Shown here one piece after another: positions 2,663 to 63,427 of a DNA stretch of 64,000 nt (position 1 is the stretch's first letter; the number at the start of each line of letters is the position of its first letter). Under the pieces are notes generated by a model. The model saw only the letters and a program-made list of their open reading frames with translations. It was not told where the DNA came from and searched no databases. The stretch is taken from positions 1 to 64,000 of IMG/VR virus record IMGVR_UViG_3300005056_000001. One strand, 5' to 3'. A program made the position numbers and the translations under genes.

Positions 2663-2724
2663 CAAATATAGACAAAAAATCCATACCAAAAAATATGGAC
2701 ACGGATTTTAACATTTCTTTAACA
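2663..2724 (-). promoter_or_regulatory. Bacteroidota-type promoter (-7 TATATTTG) with terminator-like hairpin and upstream TTAACA-N5-TTAACA box
   Basis: caaatata at 2663-2670; hairpin aaaatcc..ggattt; direct repeat at 2708-2724. Confidence 0.75.
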
Positions 2725-2747
2725 TTTATTTTTTCTTGCCTCAAAAA

Positions 2748-3335
2748 CTACACAATCAATCGTTTTTGATAAAATTCAATCTTTTCCTTAATGCTTGCAT
2801 TGTGCAACTCGATGTCAATGGGGATAATTGTTAATTTATCACAACTCAGTGCCTCGTCAAAGGCTTCTTTTTTTGTATAGACACCTGCATTGGTTTTGTA
2901 AGTAGTGTACCCGCATGAATTATCACAATAGTAAGAATAGCCTTTTTTGACGTAGCAAAATTTAACTGAGTCGTTGTCTAGGATTTCATTCAAGTCCGAC
3001 ACACGTTTTCGCTCGGTCTTAATTTTTTCTATACTTTCTAGTGTGAGTTCCTTTTTCTCAAACGAATACATGTCCATTTCCTTGGCCCTCAAGACAGGAA
3101 TATTAAATAGCGTAATCTCCGAACCACTATCCGTGTCAACCATGGTCTCGTATTTTATTTGCTTGAGGATATCATTTTTGGCCTTGCCCCTGTCTGTGGC
3201 ATATCCATAGAATTCGGAGTGAAAAAATCCATCCTCGATTTTTGACAGGTTTAGCCTCCAACACTTGCTGACCATTTTATATTCTTGTGTCTTGTTTTCT
3301 TGTGCCGTATCCGTTGAATAATTAGTCGTATCCAT
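2748..3335 (-). CDS. hypothetical phage protein
   Basis: 195-aa ORF with a C-terminal YY.DNS.GYT...AGVYT..EA motif. Confidence 0.7.
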   Translation of the reverse strand: MDTTNYSTDTAQENKTQEYKMVSKCWRLNLSKIEDGFFHSEFYGYATDRGKAKNDILKQIKYETMVDTDSGSEITLFNIPVLRAKEMDMYSFEKKELTLESIEKIKTERKRVSDLNEILDNDSVKFCYVKKGYSYYCDNSCGYTTYKTNAGVYTKKEAFDEALSCDKLTIIPIDIELHNASIKEKIEFYQKRLIV

Positions 3336-3458
3336 TTATACTTTTAGTTTTTAATATACCTTTATTTATATATGATGGCTTTTTTGGGTACCCAAAGAGA
3401 ACGTGTACGATAATTCACAAAAAAATGAAAAATCGTACACGTGGAATTGTCGTACATA

Positions 3459-3947: not shown

Positions 3948-3957
3948 GATTTATTTT

Positions 3958-4872: not shown

Positions 4873-5274
4873 TTACATTGGTGAATAATTAAAATAACTC
4901 TGACATTGTTGTTGCTCCTTTAGGATTATTCTATTATTTAAGGAACTAAAGGCAGGTTTCTCAATGTTTTTTGCCCGTAAGCGTTTAATCTTATCCACAG
5001 AATTCATGAACTTCTTTATCTTGTCAATAGCCTCGATTTTTGTGGTACAAATACCCATAAAAGGAGCCATATTAGCAGCCCCGAAAGCAATTGCGTGTTC
5101 CCACCCAACAACCATGTTTTCTACCATCACAAAAAACCGTGATAGTGGTACATTATTTTTGTTCCTGTGGTTTCCACATAAATTCCATTCGTCCTTGATA
5201 ACCTCATACACCTTGAATGTTAGCCCGTCGATAATTTGTGTAAAAACTGCATTGGAAAGTGTAGGAATGTTCAT
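4873..5274 (-). CDS. hypothetical protein
   Basis: ORF downstream of the promoter at 5323-5384. Confidence 0.7.
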   Translation of the reverse strand: MNIPTLSNAVFTQIIDGLTFKVYEVIKDEWNLCGNHRNKNNVPLSRFFVMVENMVVGWEHAIAFGAANMAPFMGICTTKIEAIDKIKKFMNSVDKIKRLRAKNIEKPAFSSLNNRIILKEQQQCQSYFNYSPM

Positions 5275-5322: not shown

Positions 5323-5384
5323 CAAATATAAGGAAACATAAACCAAAAACACAACAAAACCGAAAGCTTAACGTTTTATTAACA
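5323..5384 (-). promoter_or_regulatory. host-type promoter with TTAACG-N5-TTAACA box
   Basis: caaatata at 5323-5330; box at 5368-5384. Confidence 0.7.
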
Positions 5385-11045: not shown

Positions 11046-11088
11046 ACAAATCTACAACAAGTTTTACGATTACGCAAGTTTTACGTAA
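11046..11088 (-). promoter_or_regulatory. duplicated 43-bp promoter (second copy 11434-11476), -7 TAGATTTG
   Basis: acaaatctacaacaagtttt...ttacgcaagttttacgtaa occurs twice. Confidence 0.75.
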
Positions 11089-11392: not shown

Positions 11393-11626
11393 ATTGCCTA
11401 CTTTAATTTGTTTACGTTTGATTACTTGTTGATACAAATCTACAACAAGTTTTTTAATTACGCAAGTTTTACGTAATTTATATTTGTTTTATTTAAAACT
11501 TTCTTCAAAAACAACAAAAATCCGCCACTCCGAGTGTGTAGGAGTGGCGGCTTAAAATGTCGTGTGTTATACTGTCGTGTTTATGATTGGTGCTATCGTA
11601 CCTCTTCGTATAGTATACCATACGCC

Positions 11627-15290: not shown

Positions 15291-18200
15291 TTAAATCAGG
15301 TATTTCTCAAATTCGTAGAACTTCATATTGTCGTTTCCGTAAGTCTTGACAATGTTGTCCATAATGTGTCGGTAATCGCTTGGCAATATCCTAAGCCTGA
15401 CATCACGCTCCTTTGTGTGTGGATTGGTCTTGATTATGAAGAATGTTTTTAGGTTTTCTTCCACACGGTTTTCCAAACGACTTCTGTTGTAGTCGGATAT
15501 CGTGGAAATGCCCTTGACATCATTGTTCATGAGTACCATCGTGGCTAGTTTATAGACAGACATTTTTAGCTTTGCGTATGTGTCTTCTGATATGACATAA
15601 TTGATTTTTGTAAGTGACTCATATGCCTCGAACATTTTCTTTTTGGTGTCCTCGGCAATCCCAATTGTTGATTGGGTATTTGGTTTTGTGTTGTTTGATA
15701 GGTGGAGTGTGATGTCCTTTATCATCTTCTTGCGAATTTTATTTTCTGCACTTTCGAGTGTTTCTATATGACTGCTCATACGTTTTCCTCTTTTTGCCAA
15801 TGCCAATCTTTCTAGCTGTTGAACAACCATAATATAATTGTCCAATATGTCATAGTTCCTGAAGTCGATCAGGTTACTGAACCTTTCTAGTTCGGCAATC
15901 ACCAACCCGTCGGATTTTTCGTTCATACACATGTCAACCAAAATGGAAAAGTTTTTTGGGTTATAGGCATACTGTTTGGCAATGGGCAATAATTTGCTTG
16001 TAATGTTCTTTAGTCGCTTGTGATGTTTCTCGGGATACTCTATAAGCAAGGTCGCACCGTCTCCTTGGTTTATGGTGATTTTATTGTTGTTGCTTGGTAC
16101 CATTTCGGTTTTGCAGGAGCTAATAAAGGACTCAATGTCTTTTGGCTTGGTGGTCTTCAGGAACTCATGAATCTCCTTGGCAACATCCACAGAAAACTTC
16201 TTACGCTCCTCTGAATTCTCGGAACGGCTTTGTTCGATTGCGCCAACAATATGCGGCTCGTCAATATCAATATACGTGGTATTAACACTATTATAATTAT
16301 AGTGTTTTTTAAACATATTGGCAATATATCTAATGTTGGTACCAAGTCGGTTATATTGCTGCTCGGCAATATATCTAAGTACCATTAAATTGTCTTGGAC
16401 AACCTTAATCTCTCCCATGTAGTCTTCATATGTGTAGGTAAACCTTTTGCTAAGGTCTGCCCAAATCGCAATTTTTTGTTGCTCGGTTATTTTTTCGTCA
16501 TTTAACGAAATGTAATGATTGAAATATGCCACACACTTGTCGTCGCTGATTCGGGCCCGCATTTCTCCGTCAATAACCTTGTGTATGCCCTTTAGGAAGC
16601 GATAATCAAGATTGTTGTTATAGTCTCGTTTTAGCTCATAGTATTTCTTTTTATTTTTTTCGGTTTCGTTGTAAACAGAACGGATAAGCGATGTGTTGAT
16701 ATTTTGCTTTCTAAGGCGGTTTCCGAATTGCTCAAGTGTTTGTGCACTATATTTTGCAAAGGTCGAAATAACCTCAATATCTTTGTCCTCCGACAAGTTT
16801 TTAATATCCACACCAACAGACAAGTACACACTACAAAATAAAACCTTGATGTCATTAGGAATCACGGATTGACCGTTGATTGCCTTGGATGTCACACTGT
16901 CCTTGGTGGCCCTTTTGTAGTAATGCCAATCATCTTTTGTCAACGGGTCGCTGTCCATGTGTTCAAGATGGGCATTAATACCCATAACAATTTCCTCGGC
17001 CCGAAAAGATCCCTCGTCTGTTGGACAAATAACGGTTCGATTCTCGATCATGGCCGTGGCAATCTTTTTACACAACAATGTTTTACAGTCCTTGCTAGAA
17101 TTTGTAAGGATGATATTCATATTCTTTTGTGATTGATGCGGAATCTCCAATTTAATATTCCTGACCTCGATTTTTTTACCGCCGTGCTTGACATCCTTTT
17201 CACACATACGAAAAAGGTTGACCTCATAAATATGGGTGCCCGTCATTCCTATAATGAATGGCACTCTTTCGTATGGGTTTTCTTCTTTGTATTGCAACAC
17301 CTCACGAATTCTTTTCAGGGCCATAGTACAGACCGAGTCGGCATCTGCACTACGAATTGTTTCGGTTGCCAATATGTGAATCTCGTCAATTGCAACATAA
17401 TCATAATTTAGCAACAATTCAACATCCATTCTTGAGAACTTATCAAAAGTCACAACAGACGATGTGCCCACCTTAAAGGCTTCCATCATTTCTTTGTTGT
17501 TCTTTGAGCCCGAAAACGGTTTGAATGCCTGTATTGCAGCCACCCAATCCTCTTTTTCTGAGGGGTGCAAATTTTTGTTGTTCATTATTATGTCAATCTC
17601 CCTGTTTTGGGCCTCCATACCAAACTTGGAGTCCATTGGTGCCGTGTAGGGCATAACCAATAAAACCCGTTTGCTGTGCTTTGTTGCCAACTCGGTGAAA
17701 TATGTCGTCTTGCCTGCCCCTGCACGGGCATTGATGTAATTAAAACAGCGTGTGTCAAGAAACTTTTCTAGCAATGGTGCATAGTCACTCATGTAGAATC
17801 CACCCCCAATATCTTCGGGAACAATTTCAATGTCCATATTCATCGGATTTTTGTCTATGAGCAATTGACATGCATTTTTGTAGTTCAAAAATTTGAAATC
17901 GCTGTCGGTAACAACCTTGTCGTTTTGTAATGACAGCACGCTCGCAACCAATTTGGCAACTTTTCCGACTTTTGGGTCAGTACTTTCCATCTGTTTATAG
18001 TACTGTTGTTTAAAATTGGGCAAACCTTCCTTTGTCAGAGTTTGCTCCATTCTTCGAATATACAAACCGCTACTTTTGAACATTTCTATACCCACCTTTC
18101 TGTGTATAGAAGATTTGGTCAGGTAGGTATTTCTCCATGGACACTCGCCGTCATCAAATAGGTGTTCTTCCCATTCATGCGAGTCGTGGTGCGATTTCTT

Positions 18201-29880: not shown

Positions 29881-30477
29881 TTATTTATCCGTGTCTAGTG
29901 ACATCAGAAATTCCGTGAGGCGTTTATGGTCACCCTCTATTTTATTGGTATACGCAACCTCTCCTAGTTCATACATGAGACCCAAGGCTTTTACGTCTTT
30001 TTGGTAGGCAATTCCGTTGGTCAATATCCCGAGTACAATTTTATTTTCTTGGATATTAATTTTTTCAGACCATGTTAACTCATTGGAGTTGTTTATGCTC
30101 GTGTGTATATTGACAAGATTTTCGAACCATTGGTATAAATTGTCAATTGCGTAAATTGCATCATAAATACTTTCTATTATAGAATCTGTCCATACAAAAG
30201 TGTTTGTGCAATCGCTTTCGACTTTCATTTCACCATCAAAATCAAGATAGAATATACCACTGCTGTATTTTGTTATATTCAAATCGCATGGTTGTGGATT
30301 GAATAAAAACCGTCCGCTAATCGCATCACCGATAGTGCTAATAGACACACTAGACACTATACAGTCCCCAAGTATCGTTGGTCTTTTATCAACAGGAAAG
30401 TAAAATCTCGAATTACCTTCTACTGTAACATTTTCTATTATACCTTGGATGTATTGTATCTTTTTTTGGATGGTCAT
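29881..30477 (-). CDS. hypothetical protein
   Basis: ORF downstream of a promoter with TTAACA box (30502-30563). Confidence 0.7.
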   Translation of the reverse strand: MTIQKKIQYIQGIIENVTVEGNSRFYFPVDKRPTILGDCIVSSVSISTIGDAISGRFLFNPQPCDLNITKYSSGIFYLDFDGEMKVESDCTNTFVWTDSIIESIYDAIYAIDNLYQWFENLVNIHTSINNSNELTWSEKINIQENKIVLGILTNGIAYQKDVKALGLMYELGEVAYTNKIEGDHKRLTEFLMSLDTDK

Positions 30478-30567
30478 GATTATTATTTTATTAACAATAC
30501 TCTAATATACAACAGTTTTTTGAATACACAAGCACATCGGACTATATTAACATTATTTTAACACTTT

Positions 30568-31182
30568 CTATTTTTGGCTGTCACGGCGTGTTTTTACTGT
30601 AGGCTTAAACATACCCGAGAATATTAAACCACCTGCAAGATCCAACATGAGATCATCAATCTCGCCACCATGAAAATCTTTTAGCCAATCAAAAACATTG
30701 GATACTGTGTGAATTTGGGTTGGAGTGTATTCCTTGGTGATAAAATCAAGTTTTGGAAGATGCTTTTTGTCTGCAATTAATACAGAAAGACTCATGGAGC
30801 CGTCAATGATAAATTTCATGTGCTCACCTGTCTTGTATGCGAAGTAGCCTTGTAATACAGGTTTATTGTCATAATTGGCAATATCTGTTGTGTCTTCGCC
30901 CTTGATTAGTTTTAATTTACCTTTTGTGTTTGTGATAATTTTTGCGATATTGGTACTATTAACATCCCATAATGTACTGTCAGACATTTTTTGACACCCC
31001 TTAATGTCATACATAACGCCGTCAATATGACATATATCAAACTCTTTCATGCTTGACATTGGATTGTGTGCCACGACAAAGCTATTTTCGATATCCAAAC
31101 CCGAAACCTTGAACATGTTGTTTACTTGCTCAAGAGAAAATCCGAGTGATTTTAGGTATTCGATTGTGGTTAATTTTTTCAT
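30568..31182 (-). CDS. hypothetical protein
   Basis: Start MKKLTT after the promoter at 31221-31281. Confidence 0.7.
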   Translation of the reverse strand: MKKLTTIEYLKSLGFSLEQVNNMFKVSGLDIENSFVVAHNPMSSMKEFDICHIDGVMYDIKGCQKMSDSTLWDVNSTNIAKIITNTKGKLKLIKGEDTTDIANYDNKPVLQGYFAYKTGEHMKFIIDGSMSLSVLIADKKHLPKLDFITKEYTPTQIHTVSNVFDWLKDFHGGEIDDLMLDLAGGLIFSGMFKPTVKTRRDSQK

Positions 31183-31220: not shown

Positions 31221-31281
31221 CAAATATAGGCAAAAATCCGTACCTAAAAGAATAGATACGGATTTTAACATTTCTTTAACA
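31221..31281 (-). promoter_or_regulatory. host-type promoter, hairpin and TTAACA-N5-TTAACA box
   Basis: Near copy of 2663-2724. Confidence 0.75.
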
Positions 31282-31606: not shown

Positions 31607-31933
31607 TTACACGCCATAGTGCTTTATCGTTTCGGGATGCACCGAAACATTTTTAATCTTCAATATATCCACAAGGTGTTCGCTGTCGGGTTCGTCAGAC
31701 AATGGCAAAACAAGTTTCCCGTCCAAAAACTCATACGTACCTTCTTGTGTATCATAAATTCCCTCCGAAAAAATAAGGTCTCTATGTAGAATCTTAAAGA
31801 TTTTTGAATAAGCCCCTTTATACATCCTAGAAACTCCCCTAACCAACTCGTAAGGGTCACCTTTGATTTGTATTAGGAGCTTAAATTTCGGTGCTGCTAC
31901 TAACTCTTGTATTGGTCTTTGTACTCGTTTCAT
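31607..31933 (-). CDS. putative internal head protein (MKRVQ leader)
   Basis: MKRVQRPIQE leader. Confidence 0.5.
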   Translation of the reverse strand: MKRVQRPIQELVAAPKFKLLIQIKGDPYELVRGVSRMYKGAYSKIFKILHRDLIFSEGIYDTQEGTYEFLDGKLVLPLSDEPDSEHLVDILKIKNVSVHPETIKHYGV

Positions 31934-32058
31934 GATTGGTTTTTTACATGGACTAATCTATATGATCAGTCGTAACAATACTCAAATATACAACACTTTT
32001 TGAATATCTAGGCATTTTGCATTATTTTAACATTTCTTTAACAAAAATTACCCTACAA

Positions 32059-33158: not shown

Positions 33159-33312
33159 TTTAATTGATTATTGCTCCATCGAGCGATTGTTTAATTCCTG
33201 ACATTTATGTCGTCAGGATCATTGCCTTACAATAATAAGAAGAAAAATCCATACCAACAAGTGTTGGTATGGATTTTAACGTTTAATTAACACTTCGTGT
33301 GGATAACCGACA

Positions 33313-46229: not shown

Positions 46230-47984
46230 TTAGGTAGCCATGGTACGTGCCAACCTTACAATCGACTCCTTTCCGAATTCCATAATAAAAAAGTGCTTGT
46301 CCCAATAGTAATCTGTAACATCGTAAATGTCCACATATGTAATAAAAGATGGCTTTATTTCATGCAATTTTAACTCACCCTTTCCTTCAATAAATGGCGT
46401 GCCATTGTCAAGGCCCATATTATTTATTGTGGCCCCGATATAACTTTGCTTACCCTTAACTCTTGGAAGAGTGATATGCAATCGCACAGCTTCACCCAAA
46501 AAGTTGTCGAAAAGTATATCATACAGACCTGTTCGGTATTCCATACTCTCTGTTAATTGTACCCGTTTCTCGCTCGTTGTTAATTGTACCCGTTTCATTC
46601 TTTCTAATAGTTTTTTTGATATTTTATCGAATCTGATTCCGTTATTTCCAAGTGCCACTTGATATGCCCTGACAATATCCTGTAGTGTAGGGATGGCAAC
46701 CGACTTAAAATTGTAATATCCTATATATTCCACACTTTCCTCGGTTCTTATGACCAAGGTTGATTTGTTTTGATTATACACGATTTTTTCATATGTCTCT
46801 TCATACATAGAACCGTCCATCCAACTATGCCCAACAACAGGAATCGTGTTTCCGTCTTTTATGGCCAATCCAATTAAATAGTTGGCATAGGACATAAGTG
46901 CCAATGTTTTACTTTTTGAATGATCACTGTCAAACCCCTCAAACATACCCCTACCCCCAAAATCATCATCCAAAGAAGGTGCCCTACTTGGTGTTTGGTT
47001 TATTTGGGCCATCCCCTCGTCCATGACCTCGTCATACCACTTGATGAATTCTATCTTATTCTTTGTCTTAAAGTTGTCGATAACACCATCCATAATCATT
47101 CTTCCTGTCATGAATTGGTCAAATTCGGGAGCATTCATTTCCTCTGCTGCTGCCGTCAGGTTCATGTGTATCATTTGGAAAGCAACAAACAGTTCTGATG
47201 TTGGCCAAATCTTACCAAGATCATCCAAGCCTTTTCTTTCGGCCTTTGTGAGTTCTTGTTCCAATACCTTTTTAATTGCAGAAATGATTATGTCGAACCG
47301 TTCGACCTCACTCAAGGGTTTTCTTGGCATTTCCTTTTCGATGGTTTTTAGGCCACGGTGATAACCACTCAGAACAGACATTTTGTCGAAGTCGCTCATG
47401 TCGTTGGCAAAACCATCCATGATAAGCTCGAGTATATAGGATTTTTTGTGTGGCTTCTTTGAGTATTGGTTAAAGTACGAAGTAAATTCCCCGTATGCCA
47501 CAAAATTTTCAATCTCAAGGTAATCCTCGAAGTCGCCTTTTCTTGTTTGTTTAAGCGCAGTCCTAAGCCCCTTCTGTAGATCATTTAACATGTCCTCGAA
47601 TTCCCTTTTAAGGTCTTTACCCTCAAACAATCCTCGAAGTCTATGACACACAACAGATTCTTGTATCATTTTTCGGTCAGTAAGAGCCTTGGTAAGTCGT
47701 GGTTTGGTTTGATTCAATTCGACCATAAAGCCTCTTTTTGATTTATCATCGAATCCATGACCAAGCAAATCAAGAAGTAATGCGGTGTCGTACTCAGACG
47801 AGAAAATCCGTGTATTAGAGTCCTCCACAAATTTAGAAAATATAATGACGTCTTCAATATTCCCCAAATTAAACATAACATCAATGACCGTTCTTGGAAC
47901 CCTAGACCGTTCAACGATTTTTAATGATTTTTTTATAGCCCTCTTGAGCGATTCGTATTTTTGGTTGAATTCCTGTACTAGCAT
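46230..47984 (-). CDS. putative internal head protein
   Basis: Repeated helical domains separated by xxE(S/G) sites; internal MKRVQLT..EKRVQLTES. Confidence 0.55.
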   Translation of the reverse strand: MLVQEFNQKYESLKRAIKKSLKIVERSRVPRTVIDVMFNLGNIEDVIIFSKFVEDSNTRIFSSEYDTALLLDLLGHGFDDKSKRGFMVELNQTKPRLTKALTDRKMIQESVVCHRLRGLFEGKDLKREFEDMLNDLQKGLRTALKQTRKGDFEDYLEIENFVAYGEFTSYFNQYSKKPHKKSYILELIMDGFANDMSDFDKMSVLSGYHRGLKTIEKEMPRKPLSEVERFDIIISAIKKVLEQELTKAERKGLDDLGKIWPTSELFVAFQMIHMNLTAAAEEMNAPEFDQFMTGRMIMDGVIDNFKTKNKIEFIKWYDEVMDEGMAQINQTPSRAPSLDDDFGGRGMFEGFDSDHSKSKTLALMSYANYLIGLAIKDGNTIPVVGHSWMDGSMYEETYEKIVYNQNKSTLVIRTEESVEYIGYYNFKSVAIPTLQDIVRAYQVALGNNGIRFDKISKKLLERMKRVQLTTSEKRVQLTESMEYRTGLYDILFDNFLGEAVRLHITLPRVKGKQSYIGATINNMGLDNGTPFIEGKGELKLHEIKPSFITYVDIYDVTDYYWDKHFFIMEFGKESIVRLARTMAT

Positions 47985-49072: not shown

Positions 49073-49164
49073 TATTGTATATTTAATGTTTTTCAATACG
49101 ATGTATGTACCATTGGTATTGTGGTATGTACCATTGGTATTTTTGGTATGTACAAATGGAGGTG

Positions 49165-50767: not shown

Positions 50768-50885
50768 ATGTAGTATAGCAGGGCTGATGATAGATTTATC
50801 ATCAGCCTTTAGTATCGTGTATGTATTGTGCTTGGTCATGATTTGTATTTTTAAATAGGTCTGTGTCGTATCTGTTATAAACTAG

Positions 50886-50972
50886 TAGAAGAAGTGGGAG
50901 TCGAACCCACACGAGTCGTTAGCTCCGAACGGTTTTCAAAACCGTGGCCACCGCCCATTGGCTTGCTCTTCC
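50886..50972 (-). tRNA. tRNA-Ser(TGA)
   Basis: ACGGT-TTTGAAA-ACCGT anticodon arm; long variable arm; TTCGA T loop. Confidence 0.85.
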
Positions 50973-51283
50973 TAATCTACAATACAACAACAAATTTCTT
51001 CAACTAATTGGGTGTCGTTGACAACATATGCGTTTCTTGATGGTAAAAATAAGAATGCCTTTGAATTGTTGACCCGTTCGATAAAGTCTGTTGTTATTAA
51101 ACCGTCTCTTACAGAAAAAATTTCTAGACTTTTCATTACACTTTCGGCAACAGCACTCACGGTTTCGTGTTTTTCAACAACTCTATTTTCGGAATCGCTC
51201 CAAAATACATGGGGACAGGAAACCTCAATAATCAATTCTTCCTTAATTCCATATTTTCCGACCAAATCATTCTTAGTAATCAT
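50972..51283 (-). CDS. hypothetical protein within tRNA cluster
   Basis: ORF. Confidence 0.6.
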   Translation of the reverse strand: MITKNDLVGKYGIKEELIIEVSCPHVFWSDSENRVVEKHETVSAVAESVMKSLEIFSVRDGLITTDFIERVNNSKAFLFLPSRNAYVVNDTQLVEEICCCIVD

Positions 51284-51354
51284 ATTGTATTTTGTTTTGT
51301 TTTGTTTTGTTAATAATCACATAACGCAATTATACAATATTTATTCAAAACTTG

Positions 51355-51437
51355 TGGGGGTAGAAGGACTCGAACCTACTCAGTCATAGACACTAGATTT
51401 ACAGTCTAGCACGGCTCTCCAACTCCGTCGCACTCCC
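51355..51437 (-). tRNA. tRNA-Tyr(GTA)
   Basis: CTAGA-CTGTAAA-TCTAG anticodon arm; long variable arm. Confidence 0.9.
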
Positions 51438-51545
51438 ATATTAACATGGTATATTTTTTCGATTATGACACTTTGTTTGGTTAAGCTATCATGGAAACTT
51501 TCCACGGAAGGGCTTCCACCTTCTTGTCTTCATAAAAGTTTCTTG

Positions 51546-51620
51546 GGCACATGACGGGATTCGAACCCGTGACCCTCGGTACCACAAACCGATGCTCTAA
51601 CCGTCTGAGCTACACGAACC
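51546..51620 (-). tRNA. tRNA-His(GTG)
   Basis: TCGGT-TTGTGGT-ACCGA anticodon arm; G-1 and C73. Confidence 0.9.
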
Positions 51621-51631
51621 ATATATTTTAG

Positions 51632-51704
51632 TGGAGCAGGAGGGACTTGAACCCACATCCTTCGCATTGCAAATGCGATGCTCAGCCAATTGAGCTACTG
51701 TCCC
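51632..51704 (-). tRNA. tRNA-Ala(TGC)
   Basis: TCGCA-TTTGCAA-TGCGA anticodon arm; G3:U70; A73. Confidence 0.92.
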
Positions 51705-54252: not shown

Positions 54253-56388
54253 TTATGCCTGATACAAATTACCGTCAGACCCAAACAAGATCACACCCTC
54301 CAATGTCGGAATTTCTCCGAGCGCAACAGAAGGGATACCCTTCTCACGGCATAAATCTGCCGTGTGGTTGAACAAGCTTTTGTTTGTGACAATAACACCC
54401 TTATAACCGTCAATGTCGGAAGGCGAGGCAAAATCACCGATAAAAATATCTTTTACATCAACTTCCATGGCATCATCAACCGAAAGATTAAGACCCTCGT
54501 GTAAAAGAGGCATGTCTGTGTCGAATGGTTTGATTTCGATGTTACCAACCATGTTTTTATATGCTGCCTGACTAATTTTGCCACACTGATAAAGATCCGT
54601 AAAATAGGCAACCTTGATACGCTTGGTAAGGATGGCAGGCTTTAGTTGGGTGATAATAATATTCCCCTTGTTGTTGACAATAAATTCCACAACACTTGCC
54701 TTTGTTCCAATTTCTCTTGCCTTCATCACCTCCTTGAGGTATGCAATTTGGTCGCCTGTCAGAACATCATAAATGTCACTACCGACAACATTCCCAAGAT
54801 TGTATTCGCTTGCGTCCCCTTGTACACACTCCCCAAATAGTCCTGTCTTGCCTGTAATCGGGTGGTGGTTATAAACAACCCCACCAACTTTAGACTCGAT
54901 ATATTCTTGGATACCAAGCGCAAAACCAAATCCCCATTCCTCGGGAAACGTGTTGTTGTCTTTTCCTTCCTTAATGATAGCCACAATTTCTGTTTTGAGT
55001 TCTTCTAATGTCACAACCCCAATATTTTTTGTTGGCAACTGACCCGATAGCGGCATCATAGGAGAAGTTCGAAGGATAATTTTTTTGCCCTCAAGACTTG
55101 TTACCCCCCTGAATGAGCACTTGGCAGCAAATGTGAAATCGTCAAGTGCCTCGAGTCCTTTTGTATAGATATCCTTGCACATATTCGAATTAAGTACAAC
55201 AAACACAGGAACCTCAGTTTTGCTATTCCCACGGAGATTTTTAAGATTTTGGTATTTTGTGCCATTCCACTTGTCTCCTTTGCCAATCATATTAAATTGA
55301 AAGATATCTTTTATGTTTCTTCCAAGCTCAAACCCTTTATAGCTTTCTGCCGCCAATGCCGCATAGACATCCGCCACTTTTACTTTGTTTTGGGAGCGTG
55401 AATCGACCACAAGTGTTTCCAAACCAAACCGAACATGCCATTCCAAGACGGTGTGTAGTTGTGAGATCGTTTCCATGCCGTGCATATGCCATGTGCCGTT
55501 TCTCATATAGAGGCAGTTATCCTTTTCCCATCCATTGCGCATTACGGCAGGCTCTAGATTATTTAGATGAACCAATATCTCATTTGCATCCAAATAAATT
55601 TTCCCTTCAGGATCCACCATTGCAGAAAAGCTGTGAAAGCCGTATGATTTGTTGTCATAGGAACAACCCGATTGCTGTCTTAATTGCTCGTTGCTCATGT
55701 ATCCCAATACATAGGCAGGAGTATAATCATAGCCATCAGGCATCCAATTGTCATGGATTTGGTTGTGTGGCGTTGTATTGAATGATGTCCCAAACAGCTC
55801 ATTTAGTGCAGCCAATTCGGAAATAAAAGCCTCCATTTTTCTTCTGTAAGAATGTTTAGGGAAAAGCAGTTCCTCCCACTCGTTTTCTTCAATCTTCTTG
55901 AAGTGTTTTGCAAGAACGTCCCTGTCGTATGAGTCGATTGGGGCAGTCTCGTATTCGGAGTCTTCCTTTTTTACAAAGTGTTTCGTAAGCAAATCCTTGT
56001 CATACGAATCAAGTATAGAACACTCCAACTTATTTTTTAACTCGACCAACTTGTCGCCTGTATTGACCATCCATGCAACATCATAGATTTCTTTTACAAG
56101 CTTTTCGGCCACCCATGTTCGGTTAAGCACCAAATGAGTTTCAGAATCACACAAAGAAAGAATCGCCTTCTTTTCTGTTTCGACGTGTGGATGGTCACTG
56201 AAGGTCATAAACCTCCGACCCTCAAGGATGTCAATATAGATAGCATCAGACAAACCATTTTGTGTGGCTTCTCTGAGCATGGATATTGCGCTCTTGACTC
56301 GAAGGTGTGTAAACTCCTCCCTTGCAACATATGTGATACGTTCTAATTCGGCCTTTAGGTCTACTCTTGGTATTGTTATGCTTTCCAT
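54253..56388 (-). CDS. PPDK/PEP-synthase-like ATP-grasp plus phospho-His swivel protein with unknown N-terminal domain
   Basis: KYQNL, VPVFVV, LRTS, SGQ, IQEYI, GGVVY...PITG, EF, TQLKP; swivel GVIVT...NHTADLCREKGIPSV. Confidence 0.7.
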   Translation of the reverse strand: MESITIPRVDLKAELERITYVAREEFTHLRVKSAISMLREATQNGLSDAIYIDILEGRRFMTFSDHPHVETEKKAILSLCDSETHLVLNRTWVAEKLVKEIYDVAWMVNTGDKLVELKNKLECSILDSYDKDLLTKHFVKKEDSEYETAPIDSYDRDVLAKHFKKIEENEWEELLFPKHSYRRKMEAFISELAALNELFGTSFNTTPHNQIHDNWMPDGYDYTPAYVLGYMSNEQLRQQSGCSYDNKSYGFHSFSAMVDPEGKIYLDANEILVHLNNLEPAVMRNGWEKDNCLYMRNGTWHMHGMETISQLHTVLEWHVRFGLETLVVDSRSQNKVKVADVYAALAAESYKGFELGRNIKDIFQFNMIGKGDKWNGTKYQNLKNLRGNSKTEVPVFVVLNSNMCKDIYTKGLEALDDFTFAAKCSFRGVTSLEGKKIILRTSPMMPLSGQLPTKNIGVVTLEELKTEIVAIIKEGKDNNTFPEEWGFGFALGIQEYIESKVGGVVYNHHPITGKTGLFGECVQGDASEYNLGNVVGSDIYDVLTGDQIAYLKEVMKAREIGTKASVVEFIVNNKGNIIITQLKPAILTKRIKVAYFTDLYQCGKISQAAYKNMVGNIEIKPFDTDMPLLHEGLNLSVDDAMEVDVKDIFIGDFASPSDIDGYKGVIVTNKSLFNHTADLCREKGIPSVALGEIPTLEGVILFGSDGNLYQA

Positions 56389-56515
56389 GATATTTTTTTA
56401 ATGCTATGTTATTGATTGATGTAAATGTATGCAAAAATATATTGTTATCAAAATGTATTTGTTGGTTTTAACATTTCTTTAACACTTCATATTGTTTTTG
56501 CGTTGGTTGAAATCC

Positions 56516-57445: not shown

Positions 57446-58105
57446 TTATAAAATATCAGCCTTCTTTGCGCCTTGAGCAAATTCTTTGCAATACATCAAA
57501 TCACTGTTAAGAATCCATTTCTTGTCACTCCCATGATAAAACATGGTTCGGTCACCCTCGACAGAGATTATGTCATTCACAGGAATAGCCACCACACATG
57601 TCCCATCGTTATAATAACGATGTGTTTTTGGTGTTCTCCTCCAACACATTTCATAATACTTGCTAGTAAAGGAATAAAACCTTTCGTTGTGAAACATTGC
57701 CTTAAATTCGATGTAGATTTCTTCGCCTGTCTCGGCACAAAAAATAGGAAATGTGTCGTAGTTAACAAAAAATCTTGGAACATCCTCCACAGCCTTTTGG
57801 TTGTCAAAATCAATCACATCCTTGTTCATGGGAGAGATAGAGTTCATGACATATCTAAAATCAACAAGATCATCTTTCATTGAGGACAAGGCATTGCTAA
57901 TTGTTGAGTCCTCAAGAAATGTGGTTGGCGTCTCACACAGCTCCTTAAATGTCGGGCTTTGCTTGCACATGGCATCCACACACATCTCCAAAAATTTAAA
58001 ATTTCCTTGCAACTGAATGTTGTTCAAGATATGCGACAGTTCGCCACATGTTGTCTTGTCTAATATATGTCTTGTTAGCTGCTTTTTTATTTTAGTATGT
58101 TCCAT
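57446..58105 (-). CDS. hypothetical protein
   Basis: ORF. Confidence 0.7.
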   Translation of the reverse strand: MEHTKIKKQLTRHILDKTTCGELSHILNNIQLQGNFKFLEMCVDAMCKQSPTFKELCETPTTFLEDSTISNALSSMKDDLVDFRYVMNSISPMNKDVIDFDNQKAVEDVPRFFVNYDTFPIFCAETGEEIYIEFKAMFHNERFYSFTSKYYEMCWRRTPKTHRYYNDGTCVVAIPVNDIISVEGDRTMFYHGSDKKWILNSDLMYCKEFAQGAKKADIL

Positions 58106-58210
58106 TGCTCTAGATTAAGATATTTTGTAATTCTTTCAAGACCCCAATATATAAAAAATTCCCCAAACAAAAAAGTCTGCACCAATAAAGATACAGACTT
58201 TAACGTTTTG

Positions 58211-58645
58211 TTAATACTTACAACCACCACGCTGCATACCACGCTGCATACCATGTTCTTCGACACAACCAATCACAAAATGACCGATTTGAATGTGAGT
58301 TCCTTCGTCAGAACAAACAAAGGACTTGTCGAACTTAACAATTTGTCCAAAGAATTTTTCTTTGTTTTTCATGTTTTTGTTAATCTCTTCAACACTTGTC
58401 TCCTTGTCTACCAATAACATACCAACAGGAATACACCCAATAGTAACCGAATCAATCGGATAAGTATTTCCGTAATTGTCTGATTGTGTCAAGTCTTGCG
58501 ACAGGTAGGCCGCAAAAAAAGGAATGTCATTAAATACTTGATTGTCTTCTGATTTGTCTTTTGCATCCAAAAATTTGTCCCATGATTTGTTAAATACATA
58601 ACAAGGGTCTCCTATATAATATAATCCTGCTTTCAGTATTGTCAT
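58211..58645 (-). CDS. hypothetical phage protein (GDPCY motif)
   Basis: YYIGDPCYVF...YPIDS..IG.IP. Confidence 0.7.
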   Translation of the reverse strand: MTILKAGLYYIGDPCYVFNKSWDKFLDAKDKSEDNQVFNDIPFFAAYLSQDLTQSDNYGNTYPIDSVTIGCIPVGMLLVDKETSVEEINKNMKNKEKFFGQIVKFDKSFVCSDEGTHIQIGHFVIGCVEEHGMQRGMQRGGCKY

Positions 58646-58795
58646 GATAATATGTTTTGCTTTTTTGATCCGATGATACCATCGGGTTGTTATTAATTAC
58701 AAGAACAATATTACAACAAAAAATCCGTACCCACAAGCGTGGGCACGGATTTTAACATTTAATTAACAATTATTTTTATCAAAACGTCATACGTA

Positions 58796-60094: not shown

Positions 60095-60346
60095 TTATAC
60101 TCTATATTTTTCAGGAAAATCAGGAAGTGGTTGCCATTCTATTGGTTCCCATCCCTGTCCTGCATTTTCTTGGGCCATTACCCATTTGTTTATGTTGCCC
60201 AAAATATAGCCCGTGTGTTGTTCGTATGATATTTTAGCAGCCACACCGCTTTCGAATAATGGCTGTGTAAGTCTTACGATAACAAGCACCATGGTGTCAA
60301 CAGGAGGAAGGGTTTTGTTTATGTCAATCCATTTGTTTTGCTTCAT
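60095..60346 (-). CDS. DUF551-like protein
   Basis: WIDINKTLPP...VLV...EWQPLPDFP. Confidence 0.7.
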   Translation of the reverse strand: MKQNKWIDINKTLPPVDTMVLVIVRLTQPLFESGVAAKISYEQHTGYILGNINKWVMAQENAGQGWEPIEWQPLPDFPEKYRV

Positions 60347-60361
60347 GTTTTTTCATTAAAA

Positions 60362-63328
60362 TTACACAATCTTAGAAGTTCCCCATGACAGACTTTTCTT
60401 GCCGTCATTGTCCTCGGTGCGCTCCATTAGATTATCAAACAAAGTCGAATCAATTCCAAATTCTTCAAATACTCCATCAAGCGTGGCGGTGTCTTTGGTT
60501 TTGATAAACTCGTTAATTTTTTCTTTGTCCATTAGCAGGGCCAAGATGTTTTTTTCTATTGTTCCGTCATACGACACGAAATGTACATCAGTATGATTCA
60601 CAGAATTATAACGAATGAAACGGAAATAAAACTGTTCCATTCTTGGGATATTCCATTGAAGACCCTCGATGATTACCTTGTCACAAGTCGGAATGTTAAC
60701 CGATGACTTCAGGGATTGTTGTGTGCATACCAAAATACCATTCTCTGTGGCCTCGAATCTGTCTAGGATTGGTTGACGCTTGTCGATACTTACGTCCCCT
60801 GTAATCACAAAAATTTGACGCTCAGGAAAAAGAATTGTAAGGTTTTCGACATATAGTTTTATGGTTTCTTTTCGGGTACATCCAATTGCAACTTTTTCGT
60901 CAAATTTTTGACACAATTGGGCAATTTTATAAAACTTGGTTGGTAGGTCTCCCTTGTAATCCGAAAATGAATTCGGGGTACTACATGCCTTGTACAACAA
61001 TTGCATTTGGCGAACTATTCTGAGGGCAGCATCTTTTCGTGTGCTGCCTGTTGACCCATAAAACTCGCTGATTATGCGGTGGAACTCACGGATTATCACG
61101 CCATAAATTCTTGCCTCATCGGCTGTTTGGTTCACATACTCTGTGTGTACCGTGAATTTTTCTCCTGCAATTTCTTTGAATTTTCTTGTTATGATTGATT
61201 GGTCAATGATCGAGACCAATTTGTCTTGATTGAAAACGTCTTGGTTTTGTTTCTTGATTCCAAAAACGGTTGCCTTGGAAGGATTAAAACAAGACTTGAA
61301 TTGTCCGAATCCCAAACGTGCCTTGTATGGCTGCATGTGGTTTTTATTGTCACGACTTTTTATGTCGCCTTCCTTGTTTTGGACATAGGTCATTTTACAG
61401 GAGTCCAACATATTCACAGAATTATTGAACAACAATTCTAATTGTGGGTATAGTTCTGTGATATTGTTTCTTGTGGTGGTTCCTGTTGCCAAAAACTTTC
61501 TTTTAACACGTCTAAAAATGTCACGGCTTGCACGAGATCGTTTTGATGTGTTTGAACAAATTTCGTCGGACTCATCCATGACAAGACAAACCTTATTACT
61601 CAACGACTTAACCAATTTTTGTAGCTCTTTTTTGAACTTGATAAGCATATTAAAACTAATCAACACAATAGAACCACTGTTTAAAATATGGCTTCTTTTG
61701 GTTATTATGGTATACTCCTCGCCCTGTGTATTCAAAAACTCTGTCCATGTTGTTTTAATGGCCAAAGAAGGAGCCACTATAAATGTTTTTTTGACTTTTG
61801 GTTGGTTGTATTTTGCAAATGCATAACACCCGCCCGTTTTTCCGCAACCCTGTTGCCAATTACAGATTGAATATTGTTTTTGTAAAAAAAGGTTTAGGTC
61901 ATGCGCCTGTATATTATTAAACTTACAGGTCACGGTTTTTTTGTTGCCTAATTTGTCGGTGTCTTCTCTCAGAAAACTAAAATCTTTTAACCATGCAGCA
62001 ATAGACTCACTTTGGGTCATTTCTGAAAATGGTGTTGTTATCTTTTTATTCTCTGCGATCTTGCGTGTGATCAGTTTATTGTATGGGTGGTCAAGATCTT
62101 TTGTCGGTATAAGGTTGGTACCCAACACCAAGTCGCTAAGGGAATACTTTTTCTTTTGTGCCTTTGGGGCCTTACCCTTGACAACAAAGCCATGACGGTG
62201 TTTTACGACTCTTAGAGTCTTGTTGGCCGCCTTTTTATTTTGGGTCTTAACAATTCTTTTTAGATAGGCAAGAACCTTGTTTTCGGTAAGCATTTTCTTG
62301 CTCCATTCGCTGTCCTCCATGCCCATTGGCTTGGTCTGTGTATTGAATTTTTCGATATACGAAATCGCACTGTCCAACTTGGCAGATATTTCGCCGTGTT
62401 GCTTGATTTCAAAAAGGTATTTCTTGACTCTAAACCCAAAATCATCATTTGTTAGCGACTTGTTAAACTCAAGACGTAACGCCGATTTAATATTGTGGCG
62501 CAATGCCAATTTCTTGGAAATTTCTGATTTTGTGCTAACACTATTCGTGTAAGGAACATCCTTGAGATGTTCGGACTTTTTTTGAAGATAGATAACCTTG
62601 GTATTATAATTCTTTACCCCCAAGGCACCAAAGGCATCATTTGTCAGTTGATATTGACCCACGAAATTAAACATCCTGTCTAGGTCATTTATTTGAGACT
62701 TATAATACATCTCGTCGCCAAGGTACGAAGTCGGAACAATGGCCGCCACAACCCCGCCATTTTTTAACATCTTGGCACACATTTTAAAAAACAGTGCATG
62801 GCTTCTGACATGCGTGTTTGTTTCGGTGTCGAACCACTCAAGACTAAAAGGAGGATTGCCCAACACGACATCAAACTTATTTTCGATGGTATTGTTTGGC
62901 AGACTTGCCTCGGTAAAGTCTGCATCAGGATACAGACGGTTGGCAACCTGCACAGACTTTGGACAAATATCCATCCCATGAAAAACGGATTCGTTAGGCA
63001 CAAAATTACAAAACACACCCATTCCACATGTCGGATCCACAATCAATTCGTTTGAGGCAAGACCCACGATATCCACAATATCACTTGCAATCATGGCAGG
63101 TGTATAAAATTGGCCATTCTCGACCTCCTTTTTTGCTGCCGAGTACTCATAGTAATTACGATAGTCTTTAAATTCTAAACCATGCAACCCTCCATCACCC
63201 GTATAGGCATTAAAAATTTGCTCATTGCTAATGGCAGCGGAATCCAATTGGATTGCCATTAAGATCTTACTATTGACCGTTTTGCGGTGGTCTTGTGGTA
63301 TTGTATCGGTAAGGATATTGTATTTCAT
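60362..63328 (-). CDS. N6-adenine DNA methyltransferase / SNF2-type helicase fusion (DarB-like)
   Basis: GQFYTP, DPTCGMG, NPPF; helicase QQGCGKT, MDESD, ATGT, SVNI, QFYFRFIR. Confidence 0.8.
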   Translation of the reverse strand: MKYNILTDTIPQDHRKTVNSKILMAIQLDSAAISNEQIFNAYTGDGGLHGLEFKDYRNYYEYSAAKKEVENGQFYTPAMIASDIVDIVGLASNELIVDPTCGMGVFCNFVPNESVFHGMDICPKSVQVANRLYPDADFTEASLPNNTIENKFDVVLGNPPFSLEWFDTETNTHVRSHALFFKMCAKMLKNGGVVAAIVPTSYLGDEMYYKSQINDLDRMFNFVGQYQLTNDAFGALGVKNYNTKVIYLQKKSEHLKDVPYTNSVSTKSEISKKLALRHNIKSALRLEFNKSLTNDDFGFRVKKYLFEIKQHGEISAKLDSAISYIEKFNTQTKPMGMEDSEWSKKMLTENKVLAYLKRIVKTQNKKAANKTLRVVKHRHGFVVKGKAPKAQKKKYSLSDLVLGTNLIPTKDLDHPYNKLITRKIAENKKITTPFSEMTQSESIAAWLKDFSFLREDTDKLGNKKTVTCKFNNIQAHDLNLFLQKQYSICNWQQGCGKTGGCYAFAKYNQPKVKKTFIVAPSLAIKTTWTEFLNTQGEEYTIITKRSHILNSGSIVLISFNMLIKFKKELQKLVKSLSNKVCLVMDESDEICSNTSKRSRASRDIFRRVKRKFLATGTTTRNNITELYPQLELLFNNSVNMLDSCKMTYVQNKEGDIKSRDNKNHMQPYKARLGFGQFKSCFNPSKATVFGIKKQNQDVFNQDKLVSIIDQSIITRKFKEIAGEKFTVHTEYVNQTADEARIYGVIIREFHRIISEFYGSTGSTRKDAALRIVRQMQLLYKACSTPNSFSDYKGDLPTKFYKIAQLCQKFDEKVAIGCTRKETIKLYVENLTILFPERQIFVITGDVSIDKRQPILDRFEATENGILVCTQQSLKSSVNIPTCDKVIIEGLQWNIPRMEQFYFRFIRYNSVNHTDVHFVSYDGTIEKNILALLMDKEKINEFIKTKDTATLDGVFEEFGIDSTLFDNLMERTEDNDGKKSLSWGTSKIV

Positions 63329-63427
63329 GCTATCTGTTTGTTTTTATGATAATGCTAAGGTAGTAATTTTTGGATAGGTGCAAGTGTATTTGGTTATTTT
63401 AACAAAATATTAACACTTGGGATGTGT

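What the first reader, a model, noticed from the sequence alone, without database searches (positions are those of the whole stretch)
2663..63415. Early-promoter regulon: TTAACR-N5-TTAACA box at a fixed 37-39 bp from the -7 element
Seen: nine copies of an 11-bp-period direct repeat at 2708, 5368, 30547, 31265, 32027, 33276, 56468, 58752 and 63399. Each lies 37-39 bp upstream of a TAnnTTTG-like -7 element (the match at ~56422 is weak). Established: 11-bp direct repeats are typical OmpR/PhoB-family sites; the Bacillus PhoP box is TTHACA repeats and CtrA binds TTAA-N7-TTAA. Inference: the phage wires early genes, including the DarB-like and PPDK-like genes, to a host response regulator (possibly phosphate sensing) or to its own activator.
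Basis: partly seen in the sequence, partly recalled or inferred. Interest (0 to 1): 0.68.

Follow-up and report, generated by a model that had tools for sequence, protein, structure and literature searches.

The report
Strong host-type promoters in jumbo phage
The repeated box is real: it is the upstream part of about 33 promoters in a 368-kb marine phage, and the same box at the same distance sits in front of ordinary genes of the host phylum (Bacteroidota) and in an unrelated Bacteroides phage, so it looks like a general strong-promoter element that the phage copies, with no sign of a phosphate switch.

Summary
Observation confirmed and extended. All nine TTAACR-N5-TTAACA boxes exist (0.03 expected). 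On the gene (-) strand they read YGTTAA-N5-YGTTAA(AAT). A tenth, one-mismatch copy lies at 58200-58216. The window is the first 64 kb of a 368,109-bp phage from seawater. Genome-wide there are 37 PWM hits (1-4 in random sequence), about 33 of them intergenic, co-oriented with the next gene and 70-118 nt before its ATG. A TAnnTTTG-like -7 element starts 53-55 nt (19 sites) or 64-66 nt (7 sites) after the box start, one helical turn apart, with a TTG (-33) between. In 15 of 32 sites the spacer also folds into a covarying terminator hairpin whose loop carries the -33 TTG. Downstream genes are mostly ORFans plus a DarB-like methylase-helicase. Structural genes use a different motif (T-run + GTACATA). 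The same box and spacing occur in Bacteroidota chromosomes (rRNA, tRNA, sRNA, TetR and ABC-transporter promoters), enriched over controls, and not in a Clostridium-family control. They also occur in Bacteroides phage B124-14. The literature says a B. fragilis phage promoter, constitutive in uninfected cells, carries 'UP elements'. Best reading: a host-recognised UP-type element of strong, probably early, promoters. PhoB, CtrA or a phage-activator reading found no support.

The parts
2663..2724 (-). Promoter module 1: box 2708-2724 (TGTTAAAGAAATGTTAA), terminator hairpin about 2675-2708, -7 TATATTTG 2663-2670. Drives ORF 2300-2623 (107 aa, no family).
5323..5384 (-). Promoter module 2: box 5368-5384 (TGTTAATAAAACGTTAA), no hairpin, -7 TATATTTG 5323-5330. 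Drives ORF 4873-5274 (133 aa).
30502..30563 (-). Promoter module 3: box 30547-30563, TTG at offset 32, -7 TATATTAG 30502-30509. Drives ORF 29881-30477 (198 aa).
31221..31281 (-). Promoter module 4: box 31265-31281, hairpin about 31232-31265 (dG -17.5), -7 TATATTTG 31221-31228. Drives ORF 30568-31182 (204 aa).
31983..32043 (-). Promoter module 5: box 32027-32043, no hairpin, -7 TATATTTG 31983-31990. Drives ORF 31607-31933 (108 aa).
33230..33292 (-). Promoter module 6: box 33276-33292, hairpin 33244-33277 (15 pairs, dG -20.6, loop CTTG), -7 TATTATTG 33230-33237. Drives ORF 32523-33158 (211 aa).
56422..56484 (-). Promoter module 7: box 56468-56484, -7 weak (TACATTTA 56422-56429; an exact TATTTTTG lies at offset 45). 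Drives ORF 54253-56388 (711 aa, no Pfam or PHROG family).
58144..58216 (-). Drives ORF 57446-58105 (219 aa).
58706..58768 (-). Promoter module 9: box 58752-58768, hairpin about 58719-58752 (dG -24.4), -7 TAATATTG 58706-58713. Drives ORF 58211-58645 (144 aa, phrog_20074, unknown function).
63355..63415 (-). Promoter module 10: box 63399-63415, TTG at offset 32, -7 TACCTTAG 63355-63362. Drives ORF 60362-63328 (988 aa, N6-methylase + helicase; phrog_24008 helicase, partial DarB-like hit).

Best explanation
The box is the upstream element of a class of strong promoters read by the host's own RNA polymerase with its primary sigma factor. Taking TAnnTTTG as -12 to -5, the layout is: two GTTAA cores at about -65/-61 and -54/-50, TTG at about -34/-32, and TAnnTTTG at -12/-5. 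The ATG follows 24-71 nt after the -7 element in the ten window sites. The box is a host-phylum element, the double-GTTAA 'UP-type' element of Bacteroidota promoters. It is recognised in uninfected cells, most likely by the flexibly tethered alpha C-terminal domains of RNA polymerase, or else by a constitutive host factor that contacts them. That would explain why it works at 53-55, 64-66 and (in hosts) 75-76 nt, always on one face of the helix. The phage places it in front of about 33 mostly ORFan or anti-defence genes, so they can be transcribed strongly from the unmodified host enzyme as soon as DNA enters (inferred 'early'). In about half of the modules the spacer between box and -7 doubles as an intrinsic terminator whose loop supplies the -33 TTG. 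Each small gene is then an insulated unit. Shown here: the motif, its placement, the phasing, hairpin covariation, and host-phylum and cross-phage conservation. Inferred: activation, the binder, and the timing.
For: Motif and placement. Phasing in the phage (19 sites at 53-55, 7 at 64-66). TTG at offsets 27-38 in 24 of 32 sites. The box marks a subset of host-type promoters (12 of 52 exact TAnnTTTG upstream hits). A separate GTACATA class drives head protease, tail sheath and tail genes. A relative phage (67% identical in a 635-aa phrog_28442 protein that lies beside the head protease gene) keeps the box and the 53-nt spacing while the spacer sequence differs. Host phylum: by my count from the record titles, 49 of the 80 listed strict-box hits are Bacteroidota. 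Exact TAnnTTTG lies at 52-55, 65-66 or 75-76 in 19 of 45 of those, against 0 of 32 elsewhere. The implied transcription starts coincide with a 16S operon leader, tRNA genes and the 5' end of FopS sRNA. The composite pattern gives 39 hits against 7 for the control in 101 Bacteroidales, 36 against 12 in 101 Flavobacteriaceae, and 5 against 6 in 101 genomes of a Clostridium family. A leaderless TetR-family gene promoter with the box is conserved in at least four Flavobacteriaceae genomes, and two more genomes show the same box-plus-palindrome pattern. Bacteroides phage B124-14 has 5 gene-strand sites with the -7 at 52-54. A B. fragilis phage promoter is said to contain 'UP elements' and to be strong and constitutive across uninfected Bacteroides. 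The phage has no Pfam-detectable RNAP, OmpR-type or LytTR protein.
Against: There are no transcription data: no RNA run holds this phage, so start sites, strength and timing are inferred. The G and TTAA of each half-site are nearly invariant (31-32 of 32, although sites were selected on these letters). Each half-site spans about 10 bp with an AA flank. That looks more like base-specific major-groove reading by a tandem-binding protein than like classical minor-groove A-tract recognition by alpha-CTD. The box sits one turn further upstream than the E. coli proximal UP subsite. Most host 16S promoters sampled carry plain A-tracts and not the exact box (1 of 24 Bacteroidales, 0 of 28 Flavobacteriaceae upstream regions, about half of which were truncated by contig ends). 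So the box is not simply 'the' UP element. The host of this phage is not identified. The primary paper that defined the Bacteroides element (Whitaker et al. 2017) could not be read.
Confidence: 0.5

Rival explanations
1. The box is bound by a dedicated, sequence-specific host activator that is present and active in growing, uninfected cells. This could be an orphan winged-helix (OmpR-like) or other tandem-binding protein that recruits RNA polymerase from one helical face (class-I type activation). Alpha-CTD would not read the box directly.
For: Head-to-tail repeats have an 11-bp period, an invariant GTTAA core and a conserved AA flank per half-site. Phasing falls at 53-55, 64-66 and 75-76. Most rRNA promoters use A-tracts, so the box marks a subset of promoters. 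The element is conserved across the phylum.
Against: No candidate protein was identified. The promoter set is heterogeneous (rRNA, tRNA, sRNA, TetR, ABC transporter, phage genes), which suits a general element better than a regulon. The literature label is 'UP elements'.
Confidence: 0.3
2. One reading: the box is a conditional response-regulator site (PhoB/PhoP-like Pho box or CtrA-like TTAA-N7-TTAA) that ties phage early genes to phosphate or another host signal.
For: The letters fit TTAA-N7-TTAA(C) and an 11-bp direct repeat. Pho boxes with a TTAA core are known in cyanobacteria (my own knowledge, not checked here).
Against: There is no box upstream of pstS homologues in 5 Flavobacteriaceae. 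The box lies upstream of an intact -33 and does not replace it. It is found at rRNA, tRNA and sRNA promoters. Phage promoters of this type are constitutive in rich medium. CtrA belongs to Alphaproteobacteria, whereas the -7 element, the relatives and the chromosomal matches are Bacteroidota.
Confidence: 0.05
3. A phage-encoded activator (MotA or lambda-CII style) binds the box, which would make these middle rather than early promoters.
For: Most phage proteins are of unknown function, so a novel DNA-binding protein cannot be excluded. The density of sites is roughly 240 times that of host genomes (my arithmetic).
Against: The same box and spacing occur in host chromosomes and in an unrelated siphovirus. 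Such a phage promoter works without the phage. Good -33 and -7 elements are present.
Confidence: 0.05
4. The box has no role of its own. It is carried along in a duplicated intergenic cassette (terminator + early promoter, like the PeSL cassettes of T4-type phages) that spreads by recombination. A variant of this idea is that it acts in RNA just before the terminator.
For: Several modules are near-identical over about 80 bp (309767 and 310651; 100205 and 102322). Half of the boxes abut a terminator hairpin.
Against: In 17 of 32 sites there is no hairpin and the spacer sequences are unrelated, yet the box and its spacing persist. The hairpin plus -7 module also occurs without a box (upstream of gene 74517-75314). 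The box and spacing are conserved in a relative phage, in B124-14 and in host promoters that lack terminators.
Confidence: 0.05

Closest known systems
Bacteroides rRNA-type and phage promoters with 'UP elements' (the P_BfP1E6 family from a B. fragilis phage; Whitaker, Shepherd & Sonnenburg, Cell 2017, as cited in bioRxiv 10.1101/2025.03.18.644028)
   Same: Two GTTAA cores a few bases apart, about 36-37 nt of spacer, then TAnnTTTG. A TTG lies at offset 31-33 in the B124-14 site I checked by hand. Orientation follows the gene. I saw this directly in Bacteroides phage B124-14 (5 sites) and in Bacteroidales rRNA and tRNA promoters. The promoter is reported as strong and constitutive.
   Different: Here it is in a 368-kb marine phage with about 33 copies. 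There is a second spacing class one turn longer, and about half the copies have a nested intrinsic terminator in the spacer. The primary paper was not readable here. My recollection that it gives a consensus of the form GTTAA-n(4-7)-GTTAA-n(34-38)-TAnnTTTG is from memory only.
E. coli UP element / alpha-CTD (rrnB P1; Ross et al. 1993, Estrem et al. 1998)
   Same: An A/T-rich element upstream of the -35-equivalent, in two subsites about one turn apart. It is typical of stable-RNA and strong phage promoters and depends on helical phase.
   Different: The core is a specific GTTAA and not A/T-tracts. It lies at -50 to -66, with about 15 bp of free spacer before the -33. The binder has not been shown.
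PeSL (promoter-early stem-loop) cassettes of T4-type phages (Arbiol, Comeau & Krisch 2010; from memory)
   Same: Repeated intergenic modules combine an early host-type promoter with a stem-loop, between small ORFan genes.
   Different: Here the stem-loop sits inside the promoter (between the upstream box and the -7, with the -33 in the loop). The host phylum and promoter type differ. Recombination or mobility was not examined.
OmpR/PhoB-family tandem sites (Pho box) and the CtrA box TTAA-N7-TTAA
   Same: Direct repeats with an 11-bp period. The letters fit TTAA-N7-TTAAC on the + strand.
   Different: The position is upstream of an intact -33. There is no link to Pho genes, no such regulator in the phage, the phylum is Bacteroidota, and the reported behaviour is constitutive.

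Membership tests
Bacteroidota primary-sigma promoter (-33 TTTG / -7 TAnnTTTG) | TAnnTTTG octamer at -12 to -5, a short distance upstream of the gene | tested here: met
   Of 32 sites, 12 are exact and 14 match 5 of 6. The octamer ends 24-71 nt before the ATG in the ten window sites.
Bacteroidota primary-sigma promoter (-33 TTTG / -7 TAnnTTTG) | TTG/TTTG about 19-23 nt upstream of the -7 element | tested here: met
   Columns 32-34 of the alignment read T-T-G in 59-69% of sites. A TTG lies at offsets 27-38 in 24 of 32 sites.
Bacteroidota primary-sigma promoter (-33 TTTG / -7 TAnnTTTG) | Transcription actually starts there | not testable with these tools
   No RNA run holds the phage. In host examples the implied start matches the 5' ends of a tRNA and of FopS.
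Bacteroides double-GTTAA 'UP-type' promoter | Two GTTAA cores 4-7 nt apart, on the gene strand | tested here: met
   The pattern is GTTAA-N6-GTTAA in 28 of 32 sites. The other four have an ATTAA variant or a similar single change.
Bacteroides double-GTTAA 'UP-type' promoter | Fixed spacer of about 34-38 nt from the second GTTAA to TAnnTTTG | tested here: met
   The spacer is 36-38 nt in 19 sites, and 47-49 nt (one turn more) in 7. The same geometry is seen in B124-14 and in host genomes.
Bacteroides double-GTTAA 'UP-type' promoter | The box raises promoter strength in uninfected cells | not testable with these tools
   There is only the literature statement for P_BfP1E6.
Pho box (PhoB/PhoP regulon site) | Direct repeats with an 11-bp period | tested here: met
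Pho box (PhoB/PhoP regulon site) | The site replaces or abuts the -35 element | tested here: not met
   The box ends about 15 bp upstream of a conserved TTG.
Pho box (PhoB/PhoP regulon site) | The same box lies upstream of host phosphate genes (pstS) | tested here: not met
   None of 5 Flavobacteriaceae pstS upstream regions has it. The sample is small and some of these genes may lie inside operons.
CtrA box | TTAA-N7-TTAA(C) pattern | tested here: met
CtrA box | The host lineage has CtrA (Alphaproteobacteria) | tested here: not met
   The promoter type, the phage relatives (Tenacibaculum phages) and the chromosomal matches are Bacteroidota. The presence of CtrA itself was not searched for.
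Intrinsic (rho-independent) terminator | G+C-rich hairpin followed by a T-run, downstream of a co-oriented gene | tested here: met
   Fifteen of 32 spacers fold at dG -12.6 to -24.4 with z of -4.3 or lower. In 12 of them a T-run follows the stem by the script's own criterion; in the rest the run is absorbed into the stem, or absent at 248483. Eight of 15 pairs show compensatory changes across 13 copies. One is called by the consensus scan.

The most novel reading that the evidence does not exclude
The double-GTTAA box is not read by alpha-CTD. It is the site of an unrecognised, phylum-wide, constitutively active Bacteroidota activator (a functional counterpart of Fis at stable-RNA promoters). 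Phages as different as a 47-kb gut siphovirus and a 368-kb marine jumbo phage both exploit it to launch their first genes.
Probability: 0.3. Interest if true: 0.7.

Novelty: new member of a known kind. Interest (0 to 1): 0.4.

Why it matters
It gives a promoter map for a largely unannotated jumbo phage. About 33 host-type (probably early) promoters and roughly 55-60 GTACATA (probably late) promoters can now be predicted, each with an implied start site. It also shows that a promoter element so far used mainly as a synthetic-biology part in gut Bacteroides extends, with the same helical geometry, to marine Bacteroidota and their phages. That makes the open question of what recognises GTTAA-N6-GTTAA directly testable. 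It also offers candidate compact strong promoter and terminator parts for Flavobacteriia. It removes the more exotic reading, that a phage is wired to host phosphate sensing.

Tried and rejected
The following led nowhere or were rejected.

- Megablast of the 5.3-kb ORF against phage records found no match.
- Relatives sought through the methylase-helicase in viral contigs: none.
- An exact search for the class-A downstream element (TATATTTGTAAGGCAATCA) in viral contigs found two contigs of an unrelated phage with a -7 element but no box.
- The sequencing-run search found only seawater and subsurface DNA metagenomes with small shares and no RNA. Start-site mapping was impossible and read laying was not used.
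- The idea that the box is the rRNA-promoter element of the likely host family was tested. None of 28 Flavobacteriaceae 16S upstream regions has the exact box, and about half of those regions were cut short by contig ends. Those long enough to show promoters carry phased (G/A)TTAAAAAAA A-tracts. Only 1 of 24 Bacteroidales 16S regions has the exact box, though all five S. copri operons have a TGTTTA/TGTTAA variant.
- The loose box alone is not enriched in single Flavobacteriaceae genomes.
- I took a conserved 'leader' after seven Bacteroidales box promoters for an sRNA. It has no Rfam match, and alignment shows only an operator-like palindrome of about 30 nt before different genes.
- Tenacibaculum phage pT24 has 9 box matches against 1 for the control, including a 4x tandem array next to a terminator. 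They lie in other repeat elements without the fixed -7 spacing, so I do not count them as the same promoter class.
- Literature: no held paper names the box. The only TGTTAA hit in an RprY paper is a primer. Whitaker 2017 and Mastropaolo 2009 are not held.
- LytTR, OmpR-type, sigma and RNAP family searches of the phage gave only a sub-threshold Sigma70_r2 hit.

Only the standard bacterial code was used.

Full report
**1. Observation**

The pattern TTAACR-N5-TTAACA occurs nine times in the window, all on the + strand and at the coordinates given. Shuffles give 0.03 on average. Nearly all genes around these sites run on the - strand. On the gene strand the box therefore reads TGTTAA-N5-YGTTAA and lies in the short gap between two co-oriented genes, 4-53 nt after the upstream stop.

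The window is the first 64 kb of a 368,109-bp virus record with a 99-bp terminal repeat. It was found at low share in seawater metagenomes, and no RNA run holds it. Its closest named relatives by one protein are the Tenacibaculum jumbo phages pT24, PTm1 and PTm5, at about 38% identity.

**2. Extent and anatomy**

- Genome-wide there are 23 exact boxes against 1 for the reversed-pattern control.
- With up to one mismatch there are 46 hits. Of these, 32 are intergenic, point towards the next gene and end 70-118 nt before its ATG.
- A PWM built on those 32 finds 37 hits of 12 bits or more, against 1-4 in random genomes, and adds one further promoter-placed site.
- Each half-site is AA-R-Y-GTTAA and the second is followed by AAT.
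- A TAnnTTTG-like octamer that begins with TA and matches at least 5 of 6 letters starts 53-55 nt after the box start in 19 sites and 64-66 nt after it in 7 sites. These two classes are one helical turn apart.
- T-T-G is the majority at offsets 32-34.
- With TAnnTTTG at -12 to -5, the GTTAA cores sit at about -65/-61 and -54/-50 and the TTG at -34/-32.
- The window holds ten such modules. The tenth (58200-58216) has one mismatch and the longer spacing.

**3. A terminator nested in the promoter**

In 15 of 32 sites the stretch between the box and the -7 element folds into a 13-15-bp hairpin. Its energy is -12.6 to -24.4 kcal/mol, with z of -4.3 or lower against shuffles. In 12 of the 15 a T-run follows the stem by the script's own criterion.

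Across 13 copies, 8 of 15 pairs keep pairing through changes on both sides, so the structure is under selection. The A-run after the box forms the foot of the stem, the loop (CTTG, ATTG or TTTG) carries the -33 TTG, and the T-run ends just before the -7 element.

The other 17 sites have unrelated, unstructured spacers but keep the box and its spacing. The box therefore acts with the promoter and not with the hairpin.

**4. What the class controls**

The genes behind the boxes are almost all without family: 9 of 10 in the window and 8 of 10 sampled elsewhere. The exceptions are:

- a 988-aa N6-methylase + helicase (phrog_24008, with a partial DarB-like hit);
- an LRR protein;
- one phrog of unknown function.

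Only 12 of 52 exact TAnnTTTG elements upstream of phage genes have a box. The box therefore marks a subset of the host-type promoters.

A different motif, a T-run followed by GTACATA 17-60 nt before the ATG, occurs at about 55-60 intergenic sites. It precedes the head maturation protease, tail sheath and tail protein genes.

The phage has no Pfam-detectable RNA polymerase, OmpR-type or LytTR protein. Its only sigma-like hit is a sub-threshold Sigma70_r2 match in a 117-aa ORF.

Taken together this fits an early class read by host polymerase and a late class read with a phage factor. The timing itself is inferred.

**5. Conservation in other phages**

A viral contig whose 635-aa phrog_28442 protein (encoded beside the head protease gene) is 67% identical has three sites with the box and a -7 element at offset 53, although the spacer sequence differs.

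Bacteroides fragilis phage B124-14, an unrelated 47-kb siphovirus, has five gene-strand sites with the -7 at 52-54, against none for the control pattern. In the one site I counted by hand, a TTG lies at offset 31-33.

**6. Conservation in host-phylum chromosomes**

By my count from the record titles, 49 of the 80 listed loci are Bacteroidota, from five orders.

In those, an exact TAnnTTTG lies at offsets 52-55 (13 cases), 65-66 (4) or 75-76 (2). In the 32 non-Bacteroidota hits none lies at these offsets.

The implied start sites coincide with:

- the leader of a Segatella copri 16S operon;
- a tRNA gene;
- the annotated 5' end of FopS sRNA;
- another tRNA gene.

Other cases precede ABC-transporter and YbjQ genes that carry an operator-like palindrome at the start site.

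The composite pattern GTTAA-N6-GTTAA-N35-38-TAnnTTTG gives these counts:

| Group searched (101 genomes each) | Matches | Reversed control |
|---|---|---|
| Bacteroidales | 39 | 7 |
| Flavobacteriaceae | 36 | 12 |
| A Clostridium family (negative control) | 5 | 6 |

Four Flavobacteriaceae genomes share a box promoter in front of a leaderless TetR-family gene, and two more show the same box-plus-palindrome pattern.

By my arithmetic the phage has about 24 exact composites per Mb, against about 0.1 per Mb in these hosts.

The exact box is not the general rRNA-promoter element. Only 1 of 24 Bacteroidales and 0 of 28 Flavobacteriaceae 16S upstream regions have it, and about half of the Flavobacteriaceae regions were cut short by contig ends. 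The rest show phased A-tracts at that place.

**7. Literature**

[quoted passage not shown] 2017. It also says that this promoter drives strong constitutive expression in uninfected Bacteroides species.
- The 2017 paper is not held. I recall that it gives a consensus of the form GTTAA-n-GTTAA-n-TAnnTTTG derived from rRNA promoters, but that is memory and not a result.
- Transcription-start maps of B. thetaiotaomicron and F. psychrophilum do not mention the box.

**8. Interpretation**

The box is a host-phylum upstream promoter element that the phage uses heavily. A phage activator is unlikely, because the element works in host chromosomes and, as reported, without the phage.

A phosphate switch is unlikely for three reasons:

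- no box precedes the five pstS homologues examined;
- the box does not replace the -33 element;
- the promoters it accompanies are housekeeping or constitutive.

What reads the box is open. The one-face phasing over three turns fits the flexibly tethered alpha-CTD or an activator that contacts it. The near-invariant GTTAA cores argue for a sequence-specific protein.

I put about 0.5 on direct recognition by RNA polymerase (UP-type), 0.3 on a dedicated constitutive host activator, and about 0.05 each on the Pho/CtrA, phage-activator and cassette-only or RNA-level readings.

**9. Verdict**

The element belongs to a kind already known from Bacteroides. The new points are its use about 33 times in a marine jumbo phage, a second spacing class, and a terminator folded into the promoter spacer. 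Interest is moderate.

Noticed in passing
window 21104(+), 32506, 40410, 46164, 48025, 49104-49153 (three tandem copies 21-22 nt apart), 50037 (all -); about 55-60 sites genome-wide, mostly 133-305 kb: A second promoter-like motif: a T-run followed by GTACATA, 17-60 nt before the ATG and often right after a terminator hairpin. It precedes the head maturation protease, tail sheath and tail protein genes, so it looks like the late promoter of this phage.
   Followed up: partly
G000 260799-261152 (-) = L028:16799-17152: A 117-aa ORF with a sub-threshold Sigma70_r2 hit only (19.3 bits, cut-off 24). It is a possible small phage sigma factor for the GTACATA class. A GTACAT site lies just upstream, before the neighbouring ORF 261163-261321.
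   Followed up: partly
window 11070-11088 and 11458-11476 (-); also upstream of G000 genes 159050-159286 and 175001-175240: A third promoter variant: the inverted repeat TTACGTAAAACTTGCGTAA lies just upstream of a CTTG that sits at the -33 position, followed by TAGATTTG. It occurs in four near-identical copies and looks like an operator for a repressor.
   Followed up: no
window 50885-51704 (-): A cluster of four tRNA genes (Ser-TGA, Tyr-GTA, His-GTG, Ala-TGC). No box lies in front of it.
   Followed up: no
window 15291-20543 (-), 21126-24014 (+), 46230-47984 (-), 54253-56388 (-): Very large ORFs (1750, 962, 584 and 711 aa) with no Pfam family; the last three also have no PHROG family. A patatin-like phospholipase lies at 1190-2236 (+).
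   Followed up: partly
G000 1-99 and 368011-368109: The 'direct terminal repeat' is exactly 99 bp. That may be an assembly overlap of a circular or permuted genome and not a true packaging repeat.
   Followed up: no
L051, L059, L066, L071, L081, L102, L114 (Bacteroidales genomes): Box promoters are followed at the start site by a conserved palindrome of about 30 nt (AGTGTAnTA...TAnTACACT) before ABC-transporter ATPase or YbjQ genes. It has no Rfam family and is probably an operator of an unknown repressor.
   Followed up: partly
L298, L302, L306, L308 (Flavobacteriaceae genomes): A leaderless TetR-family gene (ATG 4 nt after the -7 element). Its promoter has the double-GTTAA box and the palindrome ACAGACTTGTCTGT with the -33 TTG at its centre. 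This is the same 'inverted repeat around the -33' design as in the phage.
   Followed up: partly
Tenacibaculum phage pT24 (LC168164.1) 114379-114417; also near 60671, 79865, 138932, 119275-119331, 211319: Four tandem TGTTAAATAAA units (11-bp period) lie directly before a GC-rich terminator hairpin. TGTTAA-rich repeat elements of about 200 bp are present in several copies. Their relation to the promoter class described here is unclear.
   Followed up: partly
L262, L274, L279, L281 (Segatella copri rRNA operons): Four of the five 16S promoters carry TGTTTA-N4-TGTTAAA (10-bp period). The second core starts about 65 nt before the -7 element, by hand count on L262. This is a variant of the box two turns further upstream.
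   Followed up: no
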